DNA of 63,798 bases, filler included, from Bipalium vagum (lineage: Eukaryota), in assembly GCA_037834085.1 (NCBI GenBank). It is 3 parts of 3 records of this genome, joined end to end, with 100 filler letters (N's around TTAATTAATTAA, not from the genome) between each part and the next. Parts side by side here need not be neighbours in the genome. Positions count along the whole stretch, not along the records: positions 17,528 to 47,900 come from JBBMKC010270533.1; 2 more parts are not named here. One strand, written 5' to 3'. The translations under genes and the position numbers were made by a program. The notes beneath the pieces were generated by a model. That model searched no databases and was not told the DNA's origin. It was given only the letters and a program-made list of their open reading frames with translations. How positions within the stretch are numbered: position 1 is the first letter of the stretch; every line of letters begins with the position of its first letter. This document shows positions 675 through 45,800 of the stretch, piece after piece.

Positions 675-1889
675 ATGACCAGAGGTAAATGTTGTGATGG
701 TATTTTTTTTGAAATAGTTTTTATGCAATTAATTTTCGAATTTTATGAATTTAATGTGCACCTTTCCATTCAGACTTCAAGGAAGACATTTTGGTACTTT
801 ATATATTAAGTATGATTATTAAATGTTTTCGTAACGTCGATGTTAAAGTTCCTTTTGCAGTCGGACTGACGATCCTCGTATGCCTCATCATAATCGGGAT
901 AGTGATCAGAATAGCTTTGAGATCGGAGTGAGACCTTTTTTCTTTTGATCGTCGTTCATGATATAAAAATATTAATCAATTTTTTTGTTGATAATGTACA
1001 ACTGATCACCACCAGGATTTTATTTGAGATTTTTGGGCAAAAAATCAATAACTTTCTCTTTGCAGAACTCCGATCAATAACGAAGAGATTCAAAAAATCA
1101 TAAAATCTTCAGACAAAACCGTTTTGGATTACAAAGACCAATCGGATTTTTATTTGAGGTTAATATTTTGTTATTTTTAATCAATTATTTTATGACAAAT
1201 TTTTAATAATAAATAAAATAAAAATAATTATTAATTTAATATTTAATATTTTTTTCGCATATAAAAAAAGAAATATTGTGAAAATTCATAGGAAAAAAAA
1301 TTCAATATTAATAATTAATATTCAAAAATAATATTAAATAAAAATAATAATTTATTAAAAAAATTAATATTTAATATTATTATGAATAATTCACAAAAAT
1401 ATTTATTTTTAAAAATTTTATTTAATTATTTTATCACAATTAAAAGTTAAAAAAATAAAAATAATATTGAAAAAATACTGATTTAATTATTTTATCACCA
1501 ATGAATGTTCGTCTCATTGTAATTATGTTGTGTCAGATTGAAATTATTATTATTAATTTTATTATCATTATTATATTAATTTTAGCCAACATGAATGGAG
1601 CATGAGCAGCGACGATACCAATACGGAGTTCATGAAGTCAGAAGTAAGCCTTGTCACCGTATGGTTTTTGCTGAAGGGCTTGGTTCAGTAATTACCAATG
1701 AGCACATGTCGTTCATGCAAAAACCGATCATGCTCTCATTTCAAAGAATTTTCATTTTTCATTTATTATTATTTAAAAGATAACAATGGCCTCATTCAAA
1801 CATTGATTTTTTTTATTTCTTTTCAGGTTGTTGAGGAGGAACAATACAATCCAAATTTTATCGGATTTAAACAAAATGTTGAAGAATAA
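675..1889 (+). CDS. Small spliced orphan protein with one N-terminal hydrophobic (signal-anchor/TM) helix and an acidic C-terminal part; 5' end uncertain
   Basis: GT-AG exons 861-927, 1066-1158, 1586-1643 and 1827-1889 join in frame: (V)GLTILVCLIIIGIVIRIALRSE-TPINNEEIQKIIKSSDKTVLDYKDQSDFYLS-QHEWSMSSDDTNTEFMKSE-VVEEEQYNPNFIGFKQNVEE*. Candidate upstream micro-exons are 675-684 (ATG) and 774/782-793. Confidence 0.6.
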
Positions 1890-3284: not shown

Positions 3285-5015
3285 AATTAAAACTAATTTA
3301 AATTATAAATAAACGAAACATTAAATTGAGTTTAATTTACTCATTAAATATTATTTAACTTACATAATATTCAGTATTATTATTAATTATTATTAGTAAT
3401 TATTATTATTAATCTAATATTAAAAATTTTATTTTGTTGCGTACATAATAATAATAATAAATTAATTATATTTGCTGAAATTAATTTAAATTGAAAATAA
3501 GTTAATTCTGTGGTTCTCTTTATCAAAATTGCAAAATAAAAGAACTGTAACGATCATCATGGATTGGGAATGAACTCATTTCAAAGACAAATCGATATGA
3601 AATAGTATTAAAATCTTTAGAAAGATAATTGAAATGTAAAATCTGGGGAGAACGGTTTCATTCAGTTTCATAATTGAATTAATGATCTCTTGCCAAGAAC
3701 GCCGGAGAATTATTTCTAATTATTTTGGTTTACATTAGGAAAACGAGAGAGAAAACATTACGGGAAAAATCGCTAAAAATTTAATGTAATAATGGTGAAG
3801 AGTGAAATATTTTCCATTTTTCAGGCGGTAAATACATAGAATAAAATAAAACTCATAAAATCCCGACAATAATAATAACCAGGATAGGAGGTTCTGTTAT
3901 AAACAAGCGATAATGATTTCAACTGCGTTTATGCCGTCGCCTCAATTTCACTATATGTAATATGTCAATCATTTCACGTACATCATCCGTGTTAGTGACT
4001 CACCGATGACCTTCACAAAATTGGTCTTTCAGATTTGTGTGCTCACTCTGGTATTCTACTGACTCCTTGATGGTGCTTCATCCCAAAACACTAAATGAAG
4101 TCGATCCAGATATTTGTTTGGTGCATAGGAGATTATCGAATCATCGATAACTGAGGAATACAAGATTTTTCTCATTTAATAAATTATCGAGAACAATAGG
4201 AATTTGTCTCAAATATCAAAAGTGAACATCATAGATGATCAAATAGATAAAGAGAAAGTTGCTGAGTACTGAGATGATGGAAAAGAGAAAGAAATTTGTA
4301 ACAAGCAAAATGTTGACAGACAAATTTCAGAATGAAAAATAATTTTAGAATTAATAAATTAACGTTACGTTTCAATTACTCCAGAGATATCGTTCAGAAT
4401 TTTCGTATCAAATAATTTGTTAATAAATTGAAGTCGAATATTTTATTTGAACTTTCGTAACACTTTTAATAAATCAATAACGGATAAATGTTGAAAACCC
4501 ATAATTTTACTTGTGACCAATGTTAAATCGCAATCCACGACGTATAAGCAAACATTTCAGTCTCAACAGTAGTTAGGACAATTGATCACTAACGAAAAAT
4601 CACTGTTATCATCTTCATAATAATAATTATTATTAGCATTGATATTATTATTATTATTATTATTATATTTGTTATTAGTATTACTATTATTATCATTATT
4701 AGAATTAATATTATTACTTATTATCTTACAGATGTTACCCCTTTTTCAATCATCTCATTAGCTGTGGTAAGTGCTTAGTTATAGTCAAACAACTATGGCG
4801 GAGCTTGTTACAAAGTATTGTCACATTTACTACTTAATTTCATCAATTTATTAACGGAAATTAGTGGATAAATTTAACATTTGCAACAGACATGGGTTAA
4901 TTAGAAATTTACAGTTTCCTGGTTGCTGATTCTGCTTCAAAAGACATCATTCAATACAAATAATGGTACATAAAACTAAAAGACTGTAATCAGGTGCAAC
5001 CTAACGAAGGTTTGC

Positions 5016-7995: not shown

Positions 7996-8042
7996 TTTCC
8001 ATTTTGTATTTTTTGTTCAAAAAGTTTCCGTCCTTGTAATTT

Positions 8043-18566: not shown

Positions 18567-21315
18567 ATGCCTAGATATCGTAGCAGAAGTAGAGAAATAA
18601 AGGTACGTTTCTTTTTTCTAATTATAATGTCTTATAAAACGTCCAGGATGATAGACGTGATAGACACCATGATGATCATCGAAAACGAAAATCAAATGAA
18701 TCAAGTATAGATAATCGAAGAGAAAGCGATGAGTACTTCAAGTCTAAATTGAAAAATTATTTATGATTATTACAGCTCTAAACATCTTTCAAGGAAGGAT
18801 AGACGAGAGAAAAGACGGTCAAAATCGAGATCTTCTAGTCCGAAACAAAATCACAACGATCCTGTTAAAAAGAAAGAAGTCAACGAAGTAAAAATAGCGT
18901 AAGTGAATTTTTACAATTTATACGTTATATTGATTTTTTAATTTCATATAAAATTTGTAAATTTAAATTAAATTGTATCAAAGTGAATTCAAATATGAAA
19001 TTGTATTTAGGTATTTTAATAAATTTCAAATATGTTTTAGCTTTTTAAAATTTAAATATTTTGAACTAAAAAGTAAAATTCTTGAAATGATACGTTTCGC
19101 TTTTGTGACAGATACGGTTTATGTTAAACGAAATTGCCCTTTAGATAAATTGGTGATTTTATTCGTAAGTAGATTTAATTATGAAATGCATACAATGTTT
19201 AACATCACCAATTTGTCCTTACTTATTTCTTCAAACTGCTTTTTTGTCTTATTAATAAAAAAATGAGCATTTCCTATATTTTTACTTGAAAGGAGAAATT
19301 TGATAAATTCATTTATTTTTATGTTCCTCAAAAATTCGTCTTCTTTATTGACAAGTTATACAATTTATTTCCAGCATTCGATCAGCTCGAATTTTTGCTA
19401 GATTATAAATTTGAACGAAATATTGATATAAATAGTGTTTTTTATAATTAGAAATAATCAATAAGATATCTTCAAATTTTAAAATAAATTTGAGATAAAT
19501 GCGCTACCAATACTACTACTGAGAGTCAATTATTTGGAAAAAATATTTTTATAACGCTTCTTTACAAAATTACAATGAACGATGTAAAATCGACTACGAG
19601 AATTAACATGCCTGAGAACTTTGTTAATTTACTAATTTTACGAGTTATAGTTTTTGCCTTATCCTCTTATCTCTTTGTTACAATACTACAAAATGCAGTG
19701 TAAATAATATTCTTATTAAAAATAACGAGAACGGTTCTAAATCATCAAAATTTTAAAGCAAACGATTCACTATGACCACGATTATTTTTATTTAATGTAA
19801 GAGAACCTATGCAATAGACAAAAAGTTATGATTGGTTAATTTTTATTGCTTGTGAATTTTAAGTTTGCATTTTCGAATAAATCTATCGATTTTAAAATTT
19901 TGAAAAAAACCATAAAAAATGTGTGTACCAATATTGATTATTAAAAATTTGACGGTTACCTTCATGATAATTGGACGAATTGTTTTTGTTTATTCAAGTC
20001 TGTTGGATTTCTCTGATTTCAATTGTCTTACAAAGCATAATTAACGTTTTTCTAAAACCAGGATTGTGTAATTCATGTTCTCACGTGTTGAATAATTAAA
20101 AACCATTGGACATTAAAAACCGTGGAACTGGCAAATAACGGTTATAGTAATATTTATTTCATTTAACTAGTATTAACAATTCTTTTATTTTACAGCGTGT
20201 CATGGTTACCGAAAAAATGGTCTCGTAAAATAATTGGTGCGCTTTAATTAACAAATTATTTATGATTTCTTCATTTAAAAAACGAAGGTTTTATTGATAA
20301 TAATTTCAATTATCACAGAAAGCAACAAAAAACAGAATCATTCAATGGTTTTAAAATTGATCATTGATTATTGATTTCCATTTTCAGATCGGAAGACGAA
20401 GACGATGATCAAGATAGTCGAACCATTTTTGTTTGGCAATTGTCCAAAAAAATTCGTCACAGCGATTTGAAAGAGTTCTTTTCCCGTGCTGGTGCTCTGA
20501 AGGATGTACGTCTGATCAAAGATCAGCGTACCAATCGTCCCAAAGGCATAGCTTATGTGGAGTTCTGCAAGGTTGAGTCCGTTGCCAAGGCTCTGACATT
20601 CGCAGGATCGCGACTGCTTGGCGTTCCGATTCAAGTGAGATTCTTTTGTGTCGGCAGACAGTATTTTAATCGATTCTGGCACTCCCAATCAGATAAACCA
20701 GGTCATGGACAAGCCTGATATCAGTGACGGGTCGTCGGGTCTGTTGGACAACGATTATGCGGACCGCGGCGGAGTAGGATTAGGTAACACGGGTCGATTG
20801 GCACTTATGGCAAAGTTGGCCGAAGGTACGGGACTAGAGTTGCCGAAACCGGCTCTGGAAATAATGAAATCGTCTTTGGGCAGTCAGAATTTCGCGGTCA
20901 GTGACATCGTGAACATGAAGCGTCAAGTTGCACTGGCCAGTGAATGCTTCGTGCTCGGGAACATGTTCGAAAATCCGCCGAAAAGCAGTAAATCCCAGCT
21001 GGACGCGTCGTTTTTCCAGGAATTGAAGGAAGATGTTGAAGAGGAGTGCAATCGACATGGGAAAGTTATCAATGTTTTTATCGACAAGCGTAGCCCGGGT
21101 GGTAATGTTTACACGAAGTGTGCTAATGTTGAAGATGCGCGGAAATGCGTTAACGTGATGCACGGAAGATATTTCTCAGGTTTGTGTTTGTTTTCGCAGT
21201 TTTTTGCTTGTCTCACCATCATTTTGTTCTCTTAGGTCGAATCGTGACTGCTACTTTTATAACTACGAGTACTTTTCATCAAATGTTATTGTCTTCGAAT
21301 TCTGGTGTTAAATAA
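18567..21315 (+). CDS. RBM39: RBM39/CAPER-type splicing factor (RS-rich N-terminus, RRM1, linker, C-terminal UHM), about 352 aa, lacking RRM2
   Basis: Exons 18567-18602, 18647-18732, 18776-18898, 20388-20634, 20693(or 20702)-21179 and 21236-21315, all GT-AG and phase-consistent. Motifs DSRTIFVWQL..KIR..DLKEFFS, KGIAYVEF, LLGVPI, TGRLALMAKLAEGTGL, CFVLGNMF, GNVYTKC and MHGRYFSGRIVTA. Confidence 0.9.
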
Positions 21316-25228: not shown

Positions 25229-26266
25229 TTAGGATGATTCATAAGTAATTTCGTTTATTATTTAAAATAATAAAAACAAAATTATATTGTTTCAAAGTAA
25301 AGGCCATTTGAATCAATAGTTTTAAGCCATCTATCTGCAAGTTGCGGGATCCCTTGTTGATACCATTCCTTGTTCTTGAACCTGAAAAACTCTTGGCACG
25401 CCGTTTCGATCTCGTCCAAGTTATTGAATCATTGAGAAAATGTGTCATTGATCGAAAAAAATGGTAATCCGATGGGCAAGATTGGGACTGGATGTGGTAA
25501 CAGTTCAAAAGATTTACATTCTCTGATTTTTTTGATTGTTTTCTAGCCGTATGAGGTTTTGCATAATCTTGCTGTAAGACCACTCACTTTTGATTGACCA
25601 AGGCTGGATATCTCTGCTGCTTGCCCAGGGTCCAACCAATGATTTTTTTTGAGGATTGGTAAAATATATCCAATTTTCATCAGAAGTTACAATTTATCTA
25701 ATGAAACGATAGACACGCAGATTTTCCAGCAGCTTTCTACACGTTTCCATACGTTGCTTTGCCTGATTTTTAGTCAATTCGTGAGGTACTTCTCTACATC
25801 GTTTGTTGACCTAAATGATTCCATTAAGGTATCAGACAACTGTTCTAGTTCTATTCGATGGTTTGGTCTCAACAACATTACGTAGCGCTTCTTTATTCAC
25901 TGTTACTGGCCTATCGGAACGTGATTGATCGTATAGATCATTTTCACCTTCATTAAATTTTTTGAGTTAGATTTGGACTATCAATTAGAGATCACACCTC
26001 CAGCTTTCCTTTCGCATATTTTTCTGGCAGCTTCACTTGCTTTGAATTTTTGCTTCCAATAATGTCGAATCAAAGTGCGAATTTTGAGATTTTCCTTTTC
26101 TTTCAGTTAACATTTATATAACATTAATTAATTAACCTAATGGTAGAAAATTTATTAAGTTTCTAATTGATATACAAATCGATATATTCAAATTATTTTT
26201 CAACTAAAGAATTACTTTACTAAGCTACTAAAACAAAAAAACAAAATTACTTATGAATCACCATTA
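25229..26266 (-). mobile_element. Internally deleted mariner element with TIRs
   Basis: TA|TTAGGATGATTCATAAGTAATTT ... AAATTACTTATGAATCACCATTA|TA. Reverse strand encodes LQQDYAKPHTAR and CPSDYHFFRSMTHFL. Confidence 0.88.
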
Positions 26267-29334: not shown

Positions 29335-32300
29335 ATGCAAATTATTGATAATACAAATTATAAATTTGAAAGAAAATTTACTGATTGTGATACATATCAA
29401 GTTAAAATAACCACCGAGTTACTGGAAGAACTAGAAAACTGTCAAGTAATAGTACTACTTATGTTGTTTGTCTTATAGTATTCATAATTAAGAATGTCAC
29501 TGAAATTGAACTAAATATCAAAGGAAGCTCTGGTGTAATATTCGTCTAGTTTTCGTTTATCCTCGAATTATATATTTTATCTTATAGACTCTTACTATAC
29601 CATCATCGAAAAGTAAAAAGTCAAAAGTATTTGATTTAAATATTGGCTCCATATCAAGAGGAGAAAAGGAAAGTTTTGAATTGAATGCTTTTAGGTACAC
29701 TTTAAAAGTTTAAAAATAATTTAAAAGTAATTTTAGGTTAAATAAACGGGTTGAATCTTTAGGATCTTTGCAAGTGCGATTAAATGTCCAAGCCACTTCA
29801 AAAGTGTACGACATGACAAAGAAAAAAATATCAGAAGTTGAAGACGAATCGAAAAAGCATTGTGTTAAAGAATTGAAATTGGAAAAATTTCCAAATAAAC
29901 AAAGACTAGCTTATAAAGTAATGAAAAATAAGGAAGCTCGAAAATCGGAAGTGAATTTAAGCAATTCTCAAGGAACGTTTGTAAATTCGAATTCAAACGA
30001 CAGACCGATTGAAAAGGAATTTACGATTAGGTCGGTTTTCTAAAAAGGAATAACGTCAACGTTACTCTGTTAACCATAAATTTAGACAAAAAATTCTGCA
30101 TTTATTAGGGGTTAAACCATTGACCAAAGACGCATTGTTGCTTCGCTTACAGCGCCTGAACGTAACCTCATCAGATCGCCAAGAAGTAGATAGATATTTG
30201 TCTCAGGTATTTTGAATATTAAAATGGCATTATTTTTTTATATCACTCAAGTAAACCTCATTATTTATAATCAAATAATACTTTCACTGATAAGTGTGAT
30301 TTATGGATTCCTCTGCTGTCTCAGCTAGAGTCTTACAATTACACTTTTTTCCTCTTATCATCCCATGAAAATCTGTCACTTATTTTATCAAGCTTCATAA
30401 ATAAATTTCATCAGAAAGCGAAAGTTTACCATTAATTATCGATCATTATTGGTTAACACAAATTTTCTATTAACCGATGACGACTTCATTTTTACTGGGG
30501 CTTTTTTTTCATCTTTTCTTTCATCTCTGGATTTAAATTGCTTTAACAACTGTTGGAAAATTCTTACCAAATAAATTTGGTGATAATAATAGAACTTTTT
30601 GACTTTTTTTTGTTTCTACAAGTGAAAAACAATTGTTCATTTGTCACACTAAGAGATTAGTGTTGTGGAAACCCAATTTCGACAAATCCCTGAGAAATTT
30701 TATTTATCGATTATCTCGTGATTTTGTTGATGGTTTATAATTGAGATAAAATGGTTAACGGATTACATTGTTTATAAAACAAAGTATGATCGATGTAATT
30801 ATATTGAACAGTTTTTAATGTTCAAGCTGAAATTGTCCGGATGTCAATTACGTGGTAGCAAGCAGCATCGTTTGTACGAATTTTCAAAAATTCATTTTTT
30901 AAAAAAAATTACTATTACAAGATATTGATTATATAATATTGTAATTGATTTAATAAATAAAATTATTCAAATCGATTTCATTATTTTCTGCATTCTGTCA
31001 GCACTGTTTTATTTAATATATTTTATTTTCACATTTTTTCTAGCTATCCACTCTAAACAGGGAAAACATGTATCAACTTTCAAATCAATTCATTCCCGAA
31101 CTTCGTGAAGATTGGTCGTACTACAATGACGAAGAAAAACGCAAAGTTGCCAAGCTGAAATCAGATTCCAGATCAAATATTTCCAATCGTATTCCTGTAT
31201 GTGTAGTTTTTCAGTCATTTATAGTTCCATTACGATATGCTATTGATTTTTTAACTTTTTGTTAAAGTAAAACGTGTGACCTTACAATTCAACAGAGTAT
31301 CTTAAAATAAACCAGCTATTGTTGAATTCAGAATTATGCGATCACATGATTTTTGACTTGACATATATTGAATCGAAATCGATAGCGCAACTCTTCCAAA
31401 TGATTGGGTTTTTCATTAGTCTATTTTTTGTGCAGGTATCAAAACATTCCACTCAACCTCCTGTCAGTCCCGACTCTCACGAAAATACTCGCCCAAAGGC
31501 ACCACTCGCACCTCACCCGTCCCGAACAAAAATTGCCGCACTCGATATGATGGCCAAAGGCGTGAATATCGGTGAAGTCAGTAAAACGTTAAATGTTCCA
31601 GAGAATTTGATTAGTTCTTGGAAGTCGCAAGAATTTCAAATCCGACAGGTAATTATGGTGTAGATTATTCAGCCGTATTATTGATTTAACAAGTAAAACA
31701 TTGAGAGGAGGTTTTAAATGTTACTTATCGGGAGAGATGTCTCCAGCGAATTCCACACACTCGATTTAAATTGAATGAGGCAGCTTGATTATTTCTTTTA
31801 AACCATTGAGAAAGATATAAAATTTTCGTTTCATTGATAATTGTCTTGAACTCACTAAAATCGTACGAGTTTGTCTTATCTGTGCCTGTTAATGGTCTGG
31901 GTTCAATGATAACTAATAATTTTCATACCAAGTTCAATCGATTGGTTTTAAATAATCAATATCGTTAATATAAATAAATCTATAAAATAAAATTGATAAT
32001 AATAATAATATTATTATTTTCAAATAATTGCTATTAATCTCGATAGATAGTTGAAAAAGTTCAATGAAAATCATCGTTCGATATTTTGATTGGTTATGAG
32101 GAATTCTGAATTGGTTGTTTGGATAATTGTTCAATGGCACCGACAACTGGCGTATGTGAAAAATATTAGTTCACCCATCCTTTAAAAACATGATTGAGAT
32201 AATTATTATTAAATTGGGAGAAGAAAATTGTTCAAAAATGTTGTCTATTTTTAAATAAAATATTAGTATGGTAAATTAAATCGACTTACATATAATATAT

Positions 32301-34505
32301 GGAATAAAATTTTTTTATCGATTATTTCAATTTCATGAAAATGGTAATGTGAAAAATATGATTTTAAATTTATTTTTTGTGAAACGCAGTGTGTAATGAT
32401 TTTTTAATCGTTCAATCTTTTAATTTAAAAATATTGTTCTAGTGAAGCACATTATTCAATATTTTTCTAAGAATTTGAAAGTTGTGATTTCTGTGTTGAT
32501 AACTGGTCGATTTTTTGTCACTGATCAATTTTACATGCACAAAACAAGAGTTTTCTGCAGGAAAACATTATACTTCAAAGTTAAATTTGATTGGTCAAAG
32601 TCAAATATAGATTTGTTGATATTGATCTACAAATCTGGAATTGCAAGTTCTAATGATAGCTTGCACACTATTACGCCTCGTTTACAACGAAAACTTGTTT
32701 AAATATTTCTGGCACATGTACGTGTTTAAAATCTATTGAGGAGGAGCCGCAGCTCGATAAATGAGCTAACTAGTTTGGTGTAGTTAAATTTTTTTGAGGT
32801 GGGTAAAATAACCCACCACGTATCCTAAGCATCACAAAATGCGGGCACATTTTATACCAAAATCCTGCAGAGTTAACGGAACTTTTCGGCTATAATAGAA
32901 TTTTAATGATTTTTTGCTATAAGTTTTCCAGTATTATTAATATGGACTTGATTAATTTCAGGTACAATGTCTCCCATTAAAGACAGTGATTTCAGTATTG
33001 TAATTTTTATTGATTTTTTATAAACAGGGTTTTTTATAAAAATTCACTATAAAATTTATTATTTTTATGAATAAAATTTCTTAAAAATGGAATTCTTATC
33101 AGTAAATTGAACACTGTTTTTTATGTGAACATTTTTTTAAGAATTATGAGAATGGTAAAAGGTCAAACGACTTTATACCCCAGAATGCTCAACAAAAAGA
33201 AAACACAGTCAGCCCGGTTAATGTAACTAGGTTAAACTTACCATCCAGTAATGCCAACGAAATGTCTGCCTATAAAAGTCACAGACCGTTTGATGAGACT
33301 TTTGTTGATTCTGATAAGCAGTCCTCTCGTATGGCACTGGTCAATGGCAACAACAGCAATAATAAACGCCGCTTAGAACATTCAGACAAATCGCATTCGA
33401 CAGATCAACCTGGCACAAAAAAAGTGCATTTATCTCATAACGATACACAGTCTAGTTCAAGTTGTGAAGTAACACCGAAATCAGATATATCACACGCTTC
33501 GATTTCTTCATTGCAAACAAAACCGAAAAGTGATAAAAGCAAAGAATTTCCGTCTCAAAAGTCCAATCCAAAAACATTATCTGAAACACAGAAACAATTC
33601 AATGCAGCATTTGAGGAATATTCAAAATTGTGTGAACGGTTGAAGGATTGTGAAACGAAAATTGAAACGTTGCGATTAAAATGTAAAAATGGATCAGAAG
33701 ATTACGGGGTTGGTATTATCGATTTTTTGTTTATTATATTTTTATTTATTATTATTATTACCCAATTAAAAATCTCGTTCGAATAAAATTGGTGTTAATT
33801 GATTTCTTTTTTCTTATAATTATAATTATTCAGATTAGAAATAATCTATATTTAAATATCATTTTTCTACCATCCAATCAAATATTATATTATTTTAAGT
33901 TTGGAATTTTTTATCTCATCAAAATAATTTAAGATATTTTACCATCTTTTTTGTGGTTTTATGGAAAAAATACAGCGAATTTTGTTTTGTTTACCATACG
34001 AAACTTAATCACATTTTTGGACTAGTCAAATGACCAGGTCTGTCTGGTAAATCAAACCACTTTGATTATGTCAATTTGATTATTGATGAAAAAACTCGCA
34101 CTTCAATCTGAGCAAATATTTTTTGAAAAATCGAGCAAAAATAAAAAATCGTTAATTTGCTTGTTATCAATTGACAAATCTGTAAAATATTTAATGAAAA
34201 TAATCAACGTTTTTTGTTTTTTTAAAATACTAATGTAAAGTAATAAAATCATTATTTAAATTGAAAATTCGATATTTTTTATGATTTCATAAAATATTAA
34301 TGTAAACCGATAAAATCAATATTTCAGTATGAAAAACAGTAGAGAAAATTGAACATTGACATTTTTTCAGATAATTTATGGACATGCCAAACGCCTTTTA
34401 GCCGATATGGAGTCACCAAGATTCAAGACATTAACAAACCGAGTGAAAGCACTCGAAGCGGAAATGTTTGAGTTTCTGAAACTCTTGAATTCCAGTAGTG
34501 TTTGA
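29335..34505 (+). CDS. ELL: RNA polymerase II elongation factor ELL, about 580 aa, with an extra psq/CENP-B-type HTH exon
   Basis: Exons 29335-29445, 29493-29534, 29588-29694, 29737-30030, 30086-30206, 31044-31196, 31436-31648, 33142-33708 and 34371-34505 are phase-consistent. ELL motifs: YQVKIT, LGSLQVRLNVQATSKVYDMTKKKISEVEDESK, RQKILHLLGVKPLTKDALLLRLQ, ELREDWSYYNDEE, and an occludin/ELL C-terminus QFNAAFEEYSKL...GSEDY. Confidence 0.85.
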
Positions 34506-34819
34506 ATGGTTGGTGGTCTCTCCTTGTCCACGACAAATGAATCTTGTAACCAGTGAAGTCACTGCCAAAATTCCCAGATATCTATTTCTTTCGTTTCATA
34601 AATACAAAAATCGATATTATTGTTATCATAATTTATTATTTTTATTTTATCGTTATTATTATTATTTTGAATCCTTACAAATATTAAAATGAATTATAAA
34701 TAGAAATGTGCTTAGACTGAATTCTTCAATCCGACTGATTATATTGATAAAATATTGTAAACCTACGTTTATTTTGTGTTGTGTATGATGTGGCTTGTAC
34801 GATCTTATTATTATTTTTA

Positions 34820-34823
<4 letters not shown>

Positions 34824-34890
<67 letters not shown>
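34824..34890. repeat. (ATT)n microsatellite
   Basis: Direct reading; it produces the poly-I ORF at 34795-35019. Confidence 0.95.
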
Positions 34891-34895
<5 letters not shown>

Positions 34896-36429
34896 TGTTG
34901 TTGTTGTCTGTCGTAGTCCAATGAGATGTCAGTTCCCTCGTTGTGTGAAGGATGGCTCGAAAAAGCGAATTATCTATTTAATAATAATAACAATGACAAC
35001 AATTTCATGGCATGTTTAAGAGCGCTATCAACAACGTCAGCAACACAAAAGCAACCGCAGACTTCTAAAAACAATGTGTTCTCTGTTTTAATTTGAATCC
35101 TAATAATTTATTTCGCCCTCTTTTGTAAATTATAGCGTGTCGTTTATTTATATTTTTGAGATTTATTATTTCAATTGAAATATCAACTACGTAGGGCTTT
35201 GTAAACTACTCCGAACTCCGATTGCTAACCTGTGACATATTGGGATCGATTGAATTTGTTTTCATTAGATGATTTATCGAGTTTTTCCATTTGGATTATT
35301 GTTTGGACTATTATTCTTGTCGAGCCTTAATTTGATTGTGGTTTAGAAATGTTTAGGTTTTCTTAATATATATTTCAGTTTTATATGGAGCCGCCGATGA
35401 TTGATGATTATTGTGATTTTGTTATTGAGGCCAGTGAAAGAGGAATGGATCGGACATTTTATCCACGTTTACATTTCTATTTGTTTTTGGTATTGTATTA
35501 TTGCTTGGTTATAATGGTGCTGCTGGTAATAAGTTTTTGTAATTATTAACTGTTTCCAGGTTTTTGTCACGAATGCTTTATTCGTTTAATATTTACATTT
35601 GTCTTGATTAAATTGTCTATTTGATATATATTTTGTTGAGTGAAATTGGTTTATTTGGTGGTAGAAATTTCAAAATATTTCTATTTTGATTTTATTATAT
35701 CAAATATACCGATTCAATTATGTCTTTTTTTTCAGCATTCTTAGAGAAAATGTGTTTAATATTTTTTAATTATATATAAAAAAAATTAATATCAAATTTC
35801 GTTAAATATTGTTTTCTCTTTATATAACGTATATTTGTTAGACTGAGTTTTCTTTGTGGACAAATTCAATTGATATCTTTTCCATTTGATTAAAAAATTT
35901 GGAAGCATATTTTCTGAGACAAATTCTATTTTATTATCTTTTAAGTGTATTTAGGATCTCTATTAAGAATTTCATTTTTTGATAGGAGAGTTTCAACGAA
36001 GAATTTGAGGCAGCAAATTGTTTACATAAATTTTTTAGATTTACTTTTTTGGTAAATAAATTTTCAAATGAATATGCGTTCTGTGCTTTGTTATTTATTA
36101 ACGTTTTGGTCCGCTATTCTTTGGTAATTAAATTAAATTTACTTTATCAATATCATGAGTAATATAAGCACAAAAATATTTTTAGCTATCTTGATCTTTT
36201 ATCAAAATTTATTTTATTATTAATTAATATTAGTTATTTTGGTTTATTATGTGGTAATCAATTTCAAGTTGTTTAAGAAAACTTATCTAGAGATATTAAA
36301 AAGAGTTTGGTGCAATTTTAGGTGTGGAATAAGTTCTGCATTTTTTATCAATATTAAAAGACATTAGTTCTAATAAATCAGACTATTTTATTTTTGTTTT
36401 CGATTACCTATTTCCAATGCCAATTTTAT

Positions 36430-37871: not shown

Positions 37872-40800
37872 ATGAATTTATCAATATTTTCTTGGTTTAT
37901 TTTTATTATTATTAATGTTAAATTATTTTGTAATGGAAATATTTATGATGTAATTTCTGATCTTAATTTACAAAATATAATTTTGATAGGATTTTCACGA
38001 CACAGAAAACGATGACTACAGTTATGATCATACTGCCATTTTAGGAACACATGAGGCAGAAAAATTTAGCAAAATGTCTCCAGAAGAAAGTAAGGATAAG
38101 TTCAGGTATATAATATAGGGAGTTGTATTTTTAATTGTGAAAGAGTAACTAATTATATTTTAGTGAAATTATAGATAAAATGGATATCAATGGAAATGGT
38201 CTGATTGAATCGGAAGAGATGACAAAGTGGATCAAAGACGTATTTGTTAATATTTTAGAAGAAGATGTTGATGGTCAATGGGTAAAACTTTGTCCGAAAG
38301 ATAAGAATAAATTTGATTTTAACCATTATATTTCTCAAATATATAATGAAAGTTAGATTTAATCATAATATATATCATATATCATAATATATATCATATA
38401 CTCTTATAATATATATCATATTTATGAAATGATTAACTAATAAATAATAATTATTTCAGGATGCAATAAAAATGATCAAACCAAAATAATTTCTTTAACT
38501 TAAGAATACATATTTACTCAACTCATTAATTTGATTTTGCACTATGAACTCTTTAATAACTTATGTTATTCAAAATTGTTATTTTTTAAATTCGAGGCCA
38601 ATGTTTTATATTTCAAAAAATGTTTATGGAAAATTTCTTGTTGGATAATAAGCCAATAGATATTCATATGTGAAAATATATTTGCAATTTTACAATATAT
38701 AAGTGTAATATCGATCAATATTTTGGACAAAATTTAGTTACCGATTTTGAAATTTTTGTAGACTCTATTAGTTTTATGGCACAGGAAAAATCTGAAACGT
38801 GATAGAGTTTGCTAATTTGTTAATTTGCTTCGAAGATTCACTAGTAATTGCTAACAGTATTATCAAGTTTTTATTTTTTCAGGAAAATCTCCCGAAATTA
38901 CAAAGCTAATTATCAAAGAACAACGCAGATGGCTCGTTGCAGATTTGGATAACGATACTTTATTAAACAAGTCTGAATTTTTCAGATTTTTGCACCCTGA
39001 AGGATTTAGGGACATGAAATCTTTGATTTCTCTGGTTATTTGATTAGTCAATTATTTATTTATCCCATTTATGAATTTTTTTTTGATTAATTAATTATTA
39101 ATTATTATTAATTATTAATCAATGAAACTTGAAATAATATCAACTCTTTGACCACCATGAAAATAATATTCCTTATCACGAATGAAATGCTTAGATATTC
39201 TATTTTTATATTCATCTCTCATTATATAACTGTCTTAAAAATTAATAAATTTTTTACATGAATGAAATAATAATATTCAAAAAAACTAATTTCTACTTTT
39301 TCCATGGTTCTTACTGTCTATTGTTTCCCTCTGACTCCACTATTTTCCTTTTTTTCCGTTCACTATGCGGTAAAAATAAAATATTTAAATCGATAGCTAT
39401 TACAGAAAAAAATAAACGTAACAATAATCACTAAAGGGTTAATCACTTCAGTTTGCTCAAGTCACATTTTAATTCCATTCTATCTTCAATTTCAGCACAA
39501 TTTCAATTTTTAAAATTTCAACTGACTCTCCTGTGTCGTGTAGATATTCTGTTACTGCATTATATAGGCCAGAAACTCTTCACCAGCCATCGAATATTCC
39601 CCTTTTCATCAGTTAATGGATAAGCCAGGAGTTTTTAATTACTCAGCTCAGCCAGAAAGTATTCGCCTGAGCTGAATGGTTAATTATCCTTTAGGTCTCT
39701 GAAACTTTATAATGGTTCTTTTTTCTACTCCCTATGATTATGATCGAGATCTTATTTTGCATTGAATTTCAAGTGTAACAAGACATAAATTTCGCAAATT
39801 TTTTTAAAAGGACTTTTCGAATGATGAATTAGAGCTGATGACTGGAAAGGAATGTGGTAAGAGTGGTGCTACTGACTGGAATTATTTCCGGTTGCTGTGA
39901 GGATCAGATCTCTGTTTTTCGTCATTCCTTGAAAGCGCTTTCTGATTTTCTTAATTATGAAATATGCATTCATTTCTTCCTCAATGAGATACAGAGCCGT
40001 TTTGATTGGTCGATATTTGTAGAGACTACCGAAAATCGATATTTCCATTTCCGTGGTTTTTCGCTATATATGTTAATGTCAGTTCGGGCATATATGCCGA
40101 ACAATTTATTTCTTTCAATTCAGATCTAATTTATCACATTCACGCTAAACATAACAATGGACAGAGAAAAGTTTCTAGCTCACAAGTAATAAACTTGTTA
40201 ACCCAACATAAGAATTCAATTCTGAATATCTGTGCACTTATTGAAATATCGATTTTCTATATCCTATTAAATTAAAGTCAATGATTTCACATGGAAAAAA
40301 TTTTCATTGTAGTTCTGATAAAAATTTATCAATTAGGATAATCATAAATAAAAGAATGTAAGCCATGCATGGCTTTTCATGCATATAAAATAAAACATCA
40401 ATTAAGTAACAAATATCATTTGTTAAAATAATTAATTTTGTCAAATATTTCAATTGCCCGTAATGGATACCCAGTCGATCCTGAGATTTGAAGATATTAA
40501 GTCAGTAAAAATATAATAAGTAATCTGCCTTTATTTTCTCCTGCAGCTTATAAGCTACCACTTTGGTATAGTCTCTGGATGATCACGGACGATCTAATGT
40601 TGGAAATTGGATCTCAGCGATATAATAACAATTTTTATCACTATTTTGGATATCTAAGTACATTTTAGATTTTAGTTAAAATAAAATTATTTTCAGGAAT
40701 CCTTGGAGTTACTGGATTTAAATGATGATTTAGTGGTAGATGTCAATGAATACTTAGGTTAGAAGACACAGAATATCATTTTAACAAATTTTTTGCAATA

Positions 40801-42885: not shown

Positions 42886-45800
42886 TCAAAAATTAAAATT
42901 CTCTCTCAGGTTTTTCATATCGTACAAATCAGCTGTATACTTAATAACTTTTTCCCTCTCAGTATATGAGATCTGTATTAGAGATCTGTGAATCTCTTCC
43001 ACTAACATTCGGGTCTTGATTTTTGGAATCCATATCTTTCCTTCGAACGTTTTGACCAGATTATCTTCCAAGCGGAAATAAGATGTAATTCTCTTTTCAA
43101 TATCCTCTTTAATCTGATTGATTTCATTTTCATTATTCTGCCATTTATATACTGCCTTTTCGTTTACTGTATTTATTGTTCTGGTCTTCCTTTTTTCTGT
43201 CTTTGGATCTTCATGAATCATCATACACTGAGAACACATACAACAGATTTTTCTTGATAACATGTCTGCATTTGTGTGCTCAATTCCTTTTCTGTATTTA
43301 AGCTCTATATCTAGACTGCTGAGATAGTTCATCCACGTCTGAAATTTTGCTGTTATTGGCTTTGTCGTCTTGAACATGAATTCTATTGCTTTGTGATCTG
43401 TTCTCACCAGAAATTTTTTTTCATACAAGTAATGCTTAAAATATTTAAAGAAGTAAGATTGCTAATAGTTCCTTACTTGTGATGCAGTAATCCTTTTTCT
43501 TGACTGTTCATTACATGTTATCCGTACGCGATCACTCTCTCTTTTCCATTGTATTGTCTGTCTGTGACAACACTGCTCCAAGCGCTTCAAAACTGGCGTC
43601 AGTATCTAAAATAAACGTTCTTTTAAGGTCTGGAAAAGCTAGCACTGGCGTTTTCGTTAGCGACTCTTTGAATTCTTGGAAGGCTACATTGCATGCTTCG
43701 GTCCATATTAATTTTTCATTGTTCTTCCCACATAATTGTTCTAATACTCTTGATTTTTTTGCATACCCATTGATAAATTTCCGATAATAATTACAAATGC
43801 CCAAAAAGCTTCTTAAATTTTTTAAACATCAGAACCTTTCGAAGGTTCTGATTGCCTCAATTTACACTGGATCGGTCTTGATTCCTTGTTTGTCAATTAC
43901 ATGTCTTAGTAATTTGACTTCTGTTCTTAATAGATGGCATTTCTCTGGATGCACTCTAAGTCCTGCTTCTTTTATTCTCTTTAGCACTTCATTTAAAACG
44001 GCGAAATGATGTTCTATATCCTTTGTGTGAATCATAATATTATCTAAATAGACCATCATGTTTTTCAAATTTCTTAAAACCTTCGTCATTAACTCTTAAA
44101 AAGTTCCGGGAGCAGTGGCTATACCAAACGGCATTCTTGTAAAGCAAAATTGTCCTTGTTATGAAAAAGCTCTTTTCTTGTGAATTCGTTGTTAATTCAA
44201 CCTGGTAGTATGCATTACCCAAGTCAATCGTGCTAAAATATTTAGCTCCTTCTAATCTGTCCAGTAGATCCTCTATATTTGGCATCGGAAAAGCCTGACG
44301 TTCAGTTACCTGGTTCAGCTTTCTAAAGTCTAGACATAATTTGATATCTTTTCTTTCTTATTTCCAAACGCAAATTAGTGGCGTGTTCCATGGCAAGTTG
44401 CATCTTTTTATTAGCTCTACAAGTGGGACCCACATGACCTAAACGAAAATTAGAAAAATCGACGGTTTGAACTTGTCACATTTTGCGCAACAGTAATGAT
44501 TTTTTTCTCGACCGGGTTGTGACGACTGATGAGAAGTGGATAATGTACGACAACAGACGGCGGTCAGCTCAATGATTGGACCATGATAAAGCTCCGAAAC
44601 ATTTTCCAAAGGCGAAGTTCAAGAGCATCAATAGAAAGAGAGCTATTCTATTGCACGACAATGCTCAGCCGCATTTCGCACAGTTGACCTTACAAAAATT
44701 GAAGAAGTTGGACAACGAAATCCTGCCACACTCAGCATACTCACCAGACCTTTCGCCAACAGACTACAATTTCTTCAAACATTTGAACCACTTCTTACGG
44801 GATAGATGTTTCAGAAATGAAGAGGATGCCAAAAATACCTTCAACGACTTCATCTCTGCCAGAACACAGGAATTTTATGATAGTGGCATAAAGAAACGTG
44901 TGTCTCATTGGACTAAGTGTATTCAAGCTAATGGTGCATATTTTGCTTAATAAACTTTAGTCTTACTTGAAAATTTTTACTTTAAAAGTAAAAAGTCAAA
45001 AAACGACATTCATTTCTAAACAACCTAATATTATTCCGTTCTTAAATAAATTTTTTATTGCTTCATCGATTTTATCTTCCAGATGCATTGGCTGTCTCCA
45101 CAGTTTCTTGTTAATTGGTTCATCAGTAGTTTTGATCTCGTGCTTCATCATTTTTGTACATCCAATATCCCACCGATATGCCATGAATGCTTCTTTATTT
45201 TTTTCTATTACTTCCAAGAGCTTCTTATCTTCGATGGTGACTAATATCTTCTTTGATCTCCGCAGGCGCTCTTCATCTTTAACAACTCTTCCAAACTTGA
45301 CCTCAATGTTGCATACCTGTGAGACCTCCCTTTCCATCGAAATCTTCATTAATTTAAATCCGAACTTTGTCAAAAATTCTGTTCCTCCAATCAGCTCTGG
45401 TGAAACCTGCTCAACAATTGTGAATGACATTGACTCAGCTCTATCTCCAATATAAACATCAACTGTTACTTTTCCTACCACATTCATTACACTATTATTC
45501 GCAGTCTTTATGGTCTCCATGCATCTTTGTATTTCTACATTGCCTAGTTCTAGAAACTTATTCCGACTCATTACATTTATGCAAGCTCCAGTATCCAGTA
45601 AGCATTCTATTTCGTGTCCGTGTATATTAACAGTTATACTTGGCCTTCCTTTCATCGCGTTATATTTAATACTCTGTTCATTAAAACTATTCAGCGTTAT
45701 TATCTCCTTTTCATCTCCATTCTCAAAATTTTTCTTTAAAAATCTATTAAACTTTTCCAATTCTCTCTTTTCCCCTGACACTTTTCAATTTTTACTACCC

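What the first reader, a model, noticed from the sequence alone, without database searches (positions are those of the whole stretch)
31436..31648. ELL elongation factor with an inserted pipsqueak/CENP-B-type helix-turn-helix exon
Seen: a 213-nt, stop-free, phase 0-0 exon with a strong acceptor (ttttttgtgcag) and donor (CAG|GTAATT). It sits between the ELL middle-domain exon (..ELREDWSYYNDEE..) and the low-complexity/occludin-domain exons. Its second half reads RTKIAALDMMAKGVNIGEVSKTLNVPENLISSWKSQEFQIRQ. Established: this fits the psq/CENP-B N-terminal HTH pattern (K..A....KG.....VA..LGVP.STL..W.K....IR) of pogo/Tigger transposases, CENP-B and Pipsqueak/Distal antenna; canonical ELL/ELL2/Su(Tpl) has no such domain. 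Inference: a transposase-derived or shuffled DNA-binding module was exonised into a Super Elongation Complex subunit, which could give sequence-specific recruitment of pause-release machinery. The exon is intact while the surrounding pogo remnants are decayed, which suggests selection. Its symmetric phase would allow isoforms with and without the HTH.
Basis: partly seen in the sequence, partly recalled or inferred. Interest (0 to 1): 0.85.

Follow-up and report, generated by a model that had tools for sequence, protein, structure and literature searches.

The report
Flatworm ELL carries a conserved HTH exon
The exon is real: it is an ancient, strongly conserved part of the transcription elongation factor ELL in parasitic flatworms and encodes a small DNA-binding-type helix-turn-helix that human ELL2 lacks, rather than a recent transposon capture in this genome.

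Summary
Window 31436-31648 (+) is a 213-nt, stop-free, phase 0-0 exon with AG/GT splice sites. It has 46% GC against 28% in the flanking introns. It lies between ELL-domain exons (Pfam PF10390) and the linker/occludin-like exon.

It is single copy in the 440-Mb genome and sits in that genome's only detectable ELL gene.

The same block lies directly after the ELL domain in every cestode and trematode ELL I fetched (about 15 species) and in all 9 annotated isoforms from two species. In Hymenolepis, Clonorchis and Trichobilharzia it is also a discrete phase 0-0 exon with the same 3' boundary. Two intron-less Hymenolepis-like transcript contigs contain it.

It is the best conserved part of flatworm ELL: 56% mean pairwise identity, against 40% for the ELL domain.

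AlphaFold2 gives a three-helix HTH (pLDDT 82-89). A profile of the block hits one solved structure, the psq/CENP-B_N-type HTH of Drosophila Distal antenna (E 5.8e-4), which is also the top Foldseek hit. All Pfam hits are below threshold. Human ELL2 has no counterpart.

The "HTH in ELL" reading is therefore supported. Recent exonisation from nearby pogo remnants and optional splicing are not. DNA binding is inferred, not shown.

The parts
31436..31648 (+). HTH exon of ELL: 213 nt, 71 codons, phase 0-0, single copy in the genome
   Evidence: It is 77% identical to residues 282-351 of ELL protein P0001 and aligns with cestode and trematode ELLs.
31424..31435 (+). Polypyrimidine tract and AG acceptor (ttttttgtgcag)
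31649..31654 (+). GT donor (gtaatt); the 3' exon boundary after ..IRQ matches ..LRE| in Hymenolepis, Clonorchis and Trichobilharzia
31478..31516 (+). Conserved basic, proline-rich N-terminal arm (exon residues 15-27; T18, R19, P23, A25, P26 and H27 invariant in 22 flatworm sequences); low pLDDT, probably flexible
31517..31555 (+). Predicted helix 1 (residues 28-40; I33, A35, L36 invariant), followed by invariant G42
31568..31591 (+). Predicted helix 2 (residues 45-52; V48 nearly invariant)
31601..31645 (+). Predicted helix 3, in the recognition-helix position (residues 56-70; W62, E66, R70 invariant and identical in Distal antenna)
29335..29445 (+). ELL exon 1 (start ATG; donor gtaata)
   Evidence: tblastn with P0001, 84% identity; splice site
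29588..29694 (+). ELL-domain exon (approximate 3' end). A small exon ending at 29534 lies before it; its start is unresolved.
29737..30030 (+). ELL-domain exon (PF10390 positions 101-184)
30086..30206 (+). ELL-domain exon (PF10390 positions 193-239)
31044..31196 (+). Last ELL-domain exon (PF10390 positions 241-279; ends CCT|gtatgt)
33142..33708 (+). Low-complexity linker plus start of the occludin-homology region (weak Pfam match; 3' end tentative)
34371..34505 (+). Candidate last exon with stop codon; not confirmed by any profile

Best explanation
The exon is a constitutive, anciently fixed coding exon of the single ELL gene of this flatworm. It encodes a short conserved basic, proline-rich arm followed by a three-helix helix-turn-helix of the homeodomain-like class. 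The closest solved relative is the psq/CENP-B_N type. The module sits between the ELL domain, which in human ELL2 is the part built with EAF1 on RNA polymerase II, and the C-terminal occludin-homology domain. The architecture ELL domain - HTH - linker - occludin domain is shared by cestodes, trematodes and this more divergent lineage, and human ELL2 lacks the HTH. These points are shown here: exon reality, gene context, single copy, conservation, conserved intron position, inclusion in mature mRNA of a cestode, HTH fold, and absence from human ELL2. This part is inferred: the module contacts nucleic acid, most likely DNA, through helix 3 and the basic arm. That would give flatworm ELL its own chromatin or template tether and add to or replace recruitment through partner proteins. 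I put about 0.9 on the structural and evolutionary part and about 0.5 on DNA binding.
For: - **Exon and splice sites:**
- **ELL context:** (PF10390 on three neighbouring exons; colinear tblastn with ELL protein P0001).
- **Copy number:** the exon is single copy and the genome has one ELL gene.
- **Orthologues:** phmmer against 1.84 billion representatives finds ELL proteins with the block right after the ELL domain. These are P0001, Hymenolepis P0025, Clonorchis P0028 and Dicrocoelium P0036.
- **Breadth:** every further flatworm ELL and every isoform fetched has the block at E 1e-29 to 1e-38 in a local hmmsearch.
- **Invariant columns:** 13 across 22 sequences.
- **Regional conservation:** block 56% mean pairwise identity, ELL domain 40%, occludin domain 41%, linkers 23-27%.
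- **Exon structure elsewhere:** a discrete phase 0-0 exon with the same 3' boundary in L007, L008 and L009.
- **Transcripts:** contigs L012 and L013 hold an uninterrupted 761-aa ORF including the block, and their junctions match the genomic exons of L007.
- **Fold:** AF2 gives three helices with pLDDT 82-89.
- **Family signal:** the profile against PDB hits 2elh (Distal antenna) at E 5.8e-4 and nothing else real. 2elh is the top Foldseek hit. VIA returns DNA-binding HTHs almost throughout, at Z 4-5.7.
- **Charge:** the block is basic in all species, net +2 to +5, pI 9.3-10.9.
- **Human ELL2:** it aligns to the flatworm ELL profile at the ELL and occludin domains but not at the block.
Against: - There are no RNA data for this organism, so inclusion here rests on splice signals and orthology.
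- No Pfam HTH model reaches its gathering score on any member. The best are HTH_23 at 22.7 bits against 24.6 and CENP-B_N at 18.6 against 21.2. HTH_psq gives no hit.
- Structural matches are weak (Foldseek E 0.13 or worse, VIA Z below 6) and do not separate HTH families.
- A single small HTH with modest positive charge could equally bind protein or RNA.
- Nothing tests DNA binding.
- The distribution outside Neodermata is unknown.
Confidence: 0.7

Rival explanations
1. The module has the HTH fold but works as a protein-protein or RNA-binding adaptor, for example towards Pol II, EAF or a scaffold, and not as a DNA binder.
For: The charge is only modest, net +2 to +5. Most invariant residues are core or turn positions. 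There is one HTH rather than the tandem arrays used by Psq or CENP-B. Pfam DNA-binding HTH models are all sub-threshold.
Against: Nearly all structural neighbours are DNA-binding domains. The surface-exposed invariants R19, K32, W62, E66 and R70 are shared with Distal antenna. A conserved basic arm N-terminal to helix 1 is typical of DNA-binding psq/CENP-B/Brinker-type HTHs (my own knowledge of those families).
Confidence: 0.3
2. The exon is an optional cassette, so the gene makes ELL with and without the HTH.
For: The exon is phase 0-0 and a multiple of three in all four genomes examined: 213, 312, 291 and 285 nt. Skipping would therefore keep the frame.
Against: All 3 Hymenolepis diminuta and all 6 Dicrocoelium dendriticum annotated isoforms keep the block. 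Both transcript contigs include it. It is the most conserved part of the protein.
Confidence: 0.12
3. A recent, species-level exonisation of a pogo/Tigger fragment, or an ordinary TE fragment mistaken for an exon.
For: The genome holds at least 150 CENP-B_N matches above the Pfam cut-off, that is, many pogo-like elements. hhalign between the block and those HTHs gives 77% probability.
Against: The exon is single copy at the DNA level, and the best paralogous protein match is 39% identical at E 0.026. The ELL exon is not among the genome's top 150 CENP-B_N hits. The block is at the same place in ELL of cestodes and trematodes with a conserved intron boundary. The flanking introns hold no TE coding remnant.
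Confidence: 0.02

Closest known systems
ELL / ELL2 / ELL3 / Su(Tpl) family (RNA polymerase II elongation factor; Pfam PF10390 plus PF07303)
   Same: N-terminal ELL domain, confirmed on three exons here and at E 1e-25 to 1e-47 in the orthologues. The orthologues also have the C-terminal occludin-homology domain and a low-complexity linker between the two.
   Different: A conserved block of about 57 residues, a basic arm plus a three-helix HTH, is inserted 10-70 residues after the ELL domain. Human ELL2 (7okx chain M, full-length sequence) has no counterpart. The nearest chordate and arthropod ELL clusters in the ESM Atlas list only PF10390 and PF07303.
psq / CENP-B_N-type HTH (Distal antenna PDB 2elh; CENP-B 1hlv; pogo/Tigger transposase N-termini; Pfam PF04218, PF05225)
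   Same: Three-helix HTH preceded by a basic arm. The alignment to Distal antenna is in register and shares I, A, G, V, W, E and R at the block's invariant positions. 2elh is the top Foldseek hit and has the highest identity (23%) among the VIA hits.
   Different: Scores are below the Pfam gathering score for CENP-B_N, and there is no HTH_psq hit. The spacer between arm and helix 1 is longer and proline-rich (AP.APH). There is a single copy, no second HTH and no DDE domain. The host protein is an elongation factor rather than a transposase or transcription factor.
HTH_23 / HTH_Tnp_1 / resolvase-type small HTHs (Pfam clan HTH)
   Same: These are the best-scoring Pfam models on the single sequences: HTH_23 matches 5 of 5 members, best E 8.2e-5. 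phmmer also hits unnamed metagenomic proteins made of tandem HTH_23 repeats. The Atlas feature neighbours are HTH_23 or small-terminase HTHs.
   Different: All are sub-threshold. These are generic models and do not define a specific family relationship.

Membership tests
ELL family (PF10390/PF07303) | N-terminal ELL domain | tested here: met
   PF10390 on window exons at E 7.7e-11, 5.9e-8 and 6.3e-4, covering profile positions 101-279. These are the only PF10390 matches in the genome.
ELL family (PF10390/PF07303) | C-terminal occludin-homology (OCEL) domain | tested here: inconclusive
   In the window only a weak match in 33106-33783 (E 0.019, 16.2 bits against a cut-off of 31.2). The candidate last exon has no hit. 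The feature is met in the orthologues P0025 and P0036.
CENP-B_N (PF04218) | Score at or above the Pfam gathering threshold (21.2 bits) | tested here: not met
   Window exon 12.2 bits (E 0.15). P0001 18.6 bits. 2 of 5 block sequences match at E below 1.
HTH_psq (PF05225) | Match to the Pfam model | tested here: not met
   Not listed for the exon at E up to 10, nor for any of the 5 block sequences at E up to 1.
psq/CENP-B_N-type HTH (structural class) | Three-helix HTH fold with an N-terminal arm | tested here: met
   AF2 helices at 28-40, 45-52 and 56-70 with pLDDT 82-89. Foldseek top hit 2elh, probability 0.99, E 0.13. VIA gives 2elh Z 5.2 and CENP-B Z 4.5 within a flat list of HTHs.
psq/CENP-B_N-type HTH (structural class) | Significant sequence-profile similarity to a bona fide member | tested here: met
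   Profile A4 against all PDB sequences: 2elh at E 5.8e-4, the only real hit. The same hit comes from the full-length profile A2 at E 0.0011. hhalign to the genome's own CENP-B_N domains gives 77% probability.
psq/CENP-B_N-type HTH (structural class) | Sequence-specific DNA binding | not testable with these tools
   Needs EMSA, SELEX, PBM or ChIP.
pogo/Tigger transposon fragment | Multiple genomic copies and an adjacent DDE/Tc5 transposase remnant | tested here: not met
   Single copy. No TE domain in the flanking intron ORFs.
Alternatively spliced cassette exon | Symmetric phase, plus isoforms that lack the exon | tested here: inconclusive
   Phase 0-0 is met. No annotated isoform or transcript contig lacks the exon. 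There is no RNA-seq for this organism.

The most novel reading that the evidence does not exclude
Flatworm ELL has its own sequence-reading DNA-binding domain. The elongation factor could then be delivered directly to particular promoters or promoter-proximal sequences, for example snRNA or spliced-leader RNA genes, where ELL acts in the Little Elongation Complex in other animals. That would partly bypass the scaffold proteins that recruit ELL elsewhere. It would be a lineage-wide rewiring of Pol II pause-release and elongation control in a phylum that includes major parasites.
Probability: 0.15. Interest if true: 0.8.

Novelty: new variant of a known kind. Interest (0 to 1): 0.55.

Why it matters
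ELL is a core subunit of the super and little elongation complexes. In the well-studied animals it is thought to reach genes through partner proteins and not by reading DNA itself. A DNA-binding-type HTH built into ELL suggests a different mode of recruitment or template tethering in these flatworms. The module is fixed across tapeworms, flukes and a third flatworm lineage, and it is more conserved than the ELL domain. Human ELL2 lacks it, so it is also a lineage-specific feature of an essential transcription factor in parasites of medical and veterinary importance. The public sequences are annotated simply as ELL. Two full-text searches found no paper describing the domain.

Tried and rejected
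- **RNA evidence:** The look-up of sequencing runs found no RNA run, only one run of unrecorded type that holds the whole stretch, introns included. Laying its contigs gave only 20-30-nt scraps and two repeat-type joints, which says nothing about splicing.
- **Protein searches:** The search for homologous proteins with the P0001 block returned only P0001 itself. The full-length profile search saturated at 8000 candidates and returned only flatworm ELLs, so no non-flatworm ELL could be fetched for testing.
- **Contig look-ups:** The look-up of encoding contigs had no record for P0001 or P0036. Without DNA of the close relative, dN/dS could not be computed.
- **Metagenome scan:** the scan with the block profile found no relative.
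- **Pfam on the exon alone:** only sub-threshold generic HTH hits.
- **Occludin domain:** its C-terminal half could not be confirmed in the window.
none found in this piece. ORFs at 25239-25583 (-) and 44576-44950 (+) look mariner-like by eye but gave no Pfam hit.
- **Complex prediction:** not used, because no specific protein partner is claimed.
Full report
**1. The observation**

Window 31436-31648 (+) reads as 71 sense codons. It is bounded by a pyrimidine tract plus AG (ttttttgtgcag|) and a GT donor (CAG|gtaatt). The upstream exon ends at 31196 (CCT|gtatgt). The next exon starts at 33142 after tttttttaag|.

The exon has 46% GC against 27.7% for the two flanking introns. The piece as a whole has 21-41% GC.

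Pfam confirms the gene context. PF10390 (ELL) matches the open frames at:
- 29720-30040 (E 7.7e-11, profile positions 101-184)
- 30054-30212 (E 5.9e-8, positions 193-239)
- 31044-31262 (E 6.3e-4, positions 241-279)

Occludin_ELL matches only weakly in 33106-33783 (E 0.019, below cut-off).

A colinear tblastn with the database ELL protein P0001 defines exons at about 29335-29445, 29588-29694, 29737-30030, 30086-30206, 31044-31196, 31436-31648 and 33142-33708. A candidate last exon at 34371-34505 is not confirmed by any profile.

**2. Not a repeat, and the only ELL gene**

The exon DNA occurs once in the 440-Mb assembly. At protein level the next best place is 39% identical over 41 residues, at E 0.026. 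All PF10390 matches in the genome lie on this contig, so this is the only detectable ELL gene and not a paralogue.

The genome does carry many pogo-like elements: at least 150 CENP-B_N matches above the Pfam cut-off, from 799 candidates. The ELL exon is not among them. A profile of the ELL block finds only the ELL exon strongly (E 3.5e-26). The remaining hits are weak (E 3e-4 or worse): a small tandem-HTH locus, an unclassified 417-aa ORF and three bona fide CENP-B_N sites. ORFs in the introns flanking the exon have no TE domain. The recognisable TEs in this piece are gypsy-like fragments (protease, RT, RNase H) at 42.9-45.8 kb on the minus strand.

**3. Orthologues**

A phmmer search of the 71 residues against 1.84 billion cluster representatives gave 37 hits. 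Five have a single matched stretch:
- P0001: 644 aa, 77% identical, residues 282-351
- P0025: Hymenolepis weldensis
- P0028: Clonorchis sinensis, annotated ELL
- P0036: Dicrocoelium dendriticum
- P0023: an 82-aa fragment

The four long ones carry PF10390 immediately before the matched stretch. The three named ones also carry PF07303 at the C-terminus.

Two further searches added ELLs from these genera:
- Cestodes: Rodentolepis, H. microstoma, Anoplocephala, Spirometra, Echinococcus, Taenia (several species) and Hydatigera.
- Trematodes: Opisthorchis, Paragonimus (three species), Calicophoron and the schistosomatids Trichobilharzia and Heterobilharzia.

A local HMM of the block finds it once in every one of these proteins, at E 1e-29 to 1e-38. 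It also finds it in all three annotated H. diminuta isoforms and all six D. dendriticum isoforms.

Across 22 sequences, 13 columns are invariant: T18, R19, P23, A25, P26, H27, I33, A35, L36, G42, W62, E66 and R70 in exon numbering. Twelve more columns of the block are at least 90% conserved.

Measured on nine taxonomically spread proteins, the block is the best conserved part of flatworm ELL:

| Region | Mean pairwise identity |
|---|---|
| HTH block | 56% |
| ELL domain | 40% |
| Occludin domain | 41% |
| Linkers | 23-27% |

P0001, and with it the window's lineage, is clearly more distant from cestodes and trematodes than those two groups are from each other (26% identity in the ELL domain). 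The block therefore predates the split of at least three flatworm lineages.

**4. Exon structure and transcripts elsewhere**

The block is also a discrete exon in three other genomes:

| Species | Locus and range | Length |
|---|---|---|
| Hymenolepis weldensis | L007:4489-4800 | 312 nt |
| Clonorchis sinensis | L008:15409-15699 | 291 nt |
| Trichobilharzia szidati | L009:6282-6566 | 285 nt |

Each is flanked by AG and GT and is phase 0-0. The 3' boundary falls at exactly the homologous codon (..LRE|gt there, ..IRQ|gt here). The 5' boundary lies within about 12 codons of the homologous ..SLK| position.

Two assembled contigs from two sequencing runs, L012 and L013, carry an uninterrupted 761-aa ELL ORF. 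It is 93% identical to P0025 in the block. Aligned to the H. weldensis gene, L012 shows every intron removed. The block exon (query 867-1177, subject 4489-4799) is joined to its neighbours. This is direct evidence that the exon is in mature ELL mRNA in a cestode.

No RNA run exists for the window's organism. The one available run gave nothing usable.

**5. What the block is**

On single sequences Pfam gives only sub-threshold, generic HTH hits:
- HTH_23: 5 of 5 members, best E 8.2e-5, 22.7 bits against a cut-off of 24.6
- HTH_Tnp_1: 3 of 5 members
- CENP-B_N: 2 of 5 members; P0001 scores 18.6 bits against a cut-off of 21.2
- HTH_psq: no hit

ESM-Atlas feature neighbours are HTH_23 or small-terminase HTH clusters at scores of 0.90 or lower.

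AlphaFold2 with the 22-sequence alignment predicts helices at residues 28-40, 45-52 and 56-70, with pLDDT 82-89. The conserved arm before them has low confidence.

Foldseek's best PDB hit is 2elh, the 'CENP-B N-terminal DNA-binding domain' of Drosophila Distal antenna (probability 0.99, but E only 0.13). It is followed by serine-recombinase, paired-domain, LuxR-type and CENP-B HTHs. VIA-align gives a flat list at Z 4-5.7 that consists almost entirely of DNA-binding HTHs. It includes 2elh (Z 5.2, 23% identity, the highest in the list), Tc3, Brinker, SETMAR, Mos1 and CENP-B.

The sequence profile is more discriminating. The five-species block profile searched against all PDB sequences hits 2elh at E 5.8e-4 and nothing else real. 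The in-register alignment shares the block's invariant I, A, G, V, W, E and R. hhalign against the genome's own pogo CENP-B_N domains gives 77% probability over 41 columns.

The block is basic in every species: net +2 to +5, pI 9.3-10.9.

In summary, the HTH fold is well supported. The psq/CENP-B_N type is the best family assignment, but the block fails the Pfam membership thresholds.

**6. Absent from canonical ELL**

A profile of full-length flatworm ELLs aligns to human ELL2 (7okx chain M, 640 residues) over the ELL domain (profile 15-307, E 2.9e-44) and the occludin domain (profile 669-773). It does not align over the block (profile about 333-391). That part of the same profile instead picks up 2elh.

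The nearest chordate and arthropod ELL clusters in the Atlas list only PF10390 and PF07303. This is weak evidence, because Pfam also misses the flatworm block.

I could not fetch ELLs of free-living flatworms or other invertebrate phyla, so the true phyletic range is open. The metagenome scan was blank.

**7. Interpretation**

These points are shown: a real, single-copy exon, constitutive as far as can be seen and strongly constrained, in the only ELL gene; it encodes an HTH-fold module; it was acquired before cestodes, trematodes and this lineage diverged; human ELL2 lacks it.

The following is inferred. The module binds nucleic acid, probably DNA, through helix 3 and the basic arm. That would give ELL an intrinsic tether to template or promoter DNA. 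I give this about 0.5. A protein or RNA adaptor role is the main rival, at about 0.3.

The exonisation is not recent. The exon is not an intact survivor among decayed pogo remnants. There is no evidence for isoforms with and without the HTH. An ancient origin from a pogo-type transposase remains plausible but unproven.

**8. Novelty**

Two full-text searches found no paper linking ELL to an HTH, psq or CENP-B domain, or discussing flatworm ELL. The proteins are public and annotated simply as ELL. I rate the finding a new variant of a known kind, namely ELL with an extra lineage-fixed HTH domain, and of moderate interest. It becomes high interest only if sequence-specific DNA binding is demonstrated.

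Noticed in passing
window 20371-21235 (+): A neighbouring gene about 8 kb upstream of ELL has RRM_1 (E 1.7e-13) and the RBM39 linker domain (E 3.7e-16). It is an RBM39/CAPER-like splicing factor.
   Followed up: partly
window 42886-45781 (-): Fragments of a gypsy-like LTR retroelement: aspartyl protease, RT, RNase H and RNase H-like domains in several broken frames. The + strand ORF at 44576-44950 lies inside it and looks mariner-like by eye but has no Pfam hit.
   Followed up: partly
window 25239-25583 (-): This ORF looks by eye like a mariner-type transposase C-terminus. It has no Pfam hit at E below 0.01.
   Followed up: partly
window 34776-34924 (+): A long trinucleotide microsatellite lies just downstream of the candidate ELL stop. 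It reads as poly-Y, poly-L or poly-I in the three frames.
   Followed up: no
L002 (G000:C49083) 394-576, 664-879, 1170-1379 (+): A small locus in the same genome has three successive HTH-like ORFs. The first is the closest paralogue of the ELL block (39% identity; A4 profile E 3.4e-4). Its Pfam HTH_23 and CENP-B_N hits are sub-threshold. It may be a tandem psq-like protein.
   Followed up: partly
own genome G000, many contigs: At least 150 CENP-B_N matches above the Pfam cut-off, from 799 candidates, many in short or stop-interrupted frames. The genome therefore has a large pogo/Tigger-like population.
   Followed up: no
protein P0001 (UniParc UPI0006066E27), residues about 552-644: The closest database ELL loses similarity to the window and to the other ELLs after the '..GSEDYS' point and has no occludin-domain hit. 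Its annotated C-terminus may read into an intron.
   Followed up: partly
proteins P0002-P0022 (ENA, Logan and JGI assemblies): Unnamed metagenomic proteins of 220-960 aa are built from 3-11 tandem HTH_23/HTH_Tnp_1-type repeats. They were the strongest non-ELL hits of the exon because the repeats sum.
   Followed up: partly
window 38180-38356 (+): An ORF with an EF-hand-like start (weak, E 0.0078, below cut-off). It may be an exon of a calcium-binding protein gene downstream of ELL.
   Followed up: no
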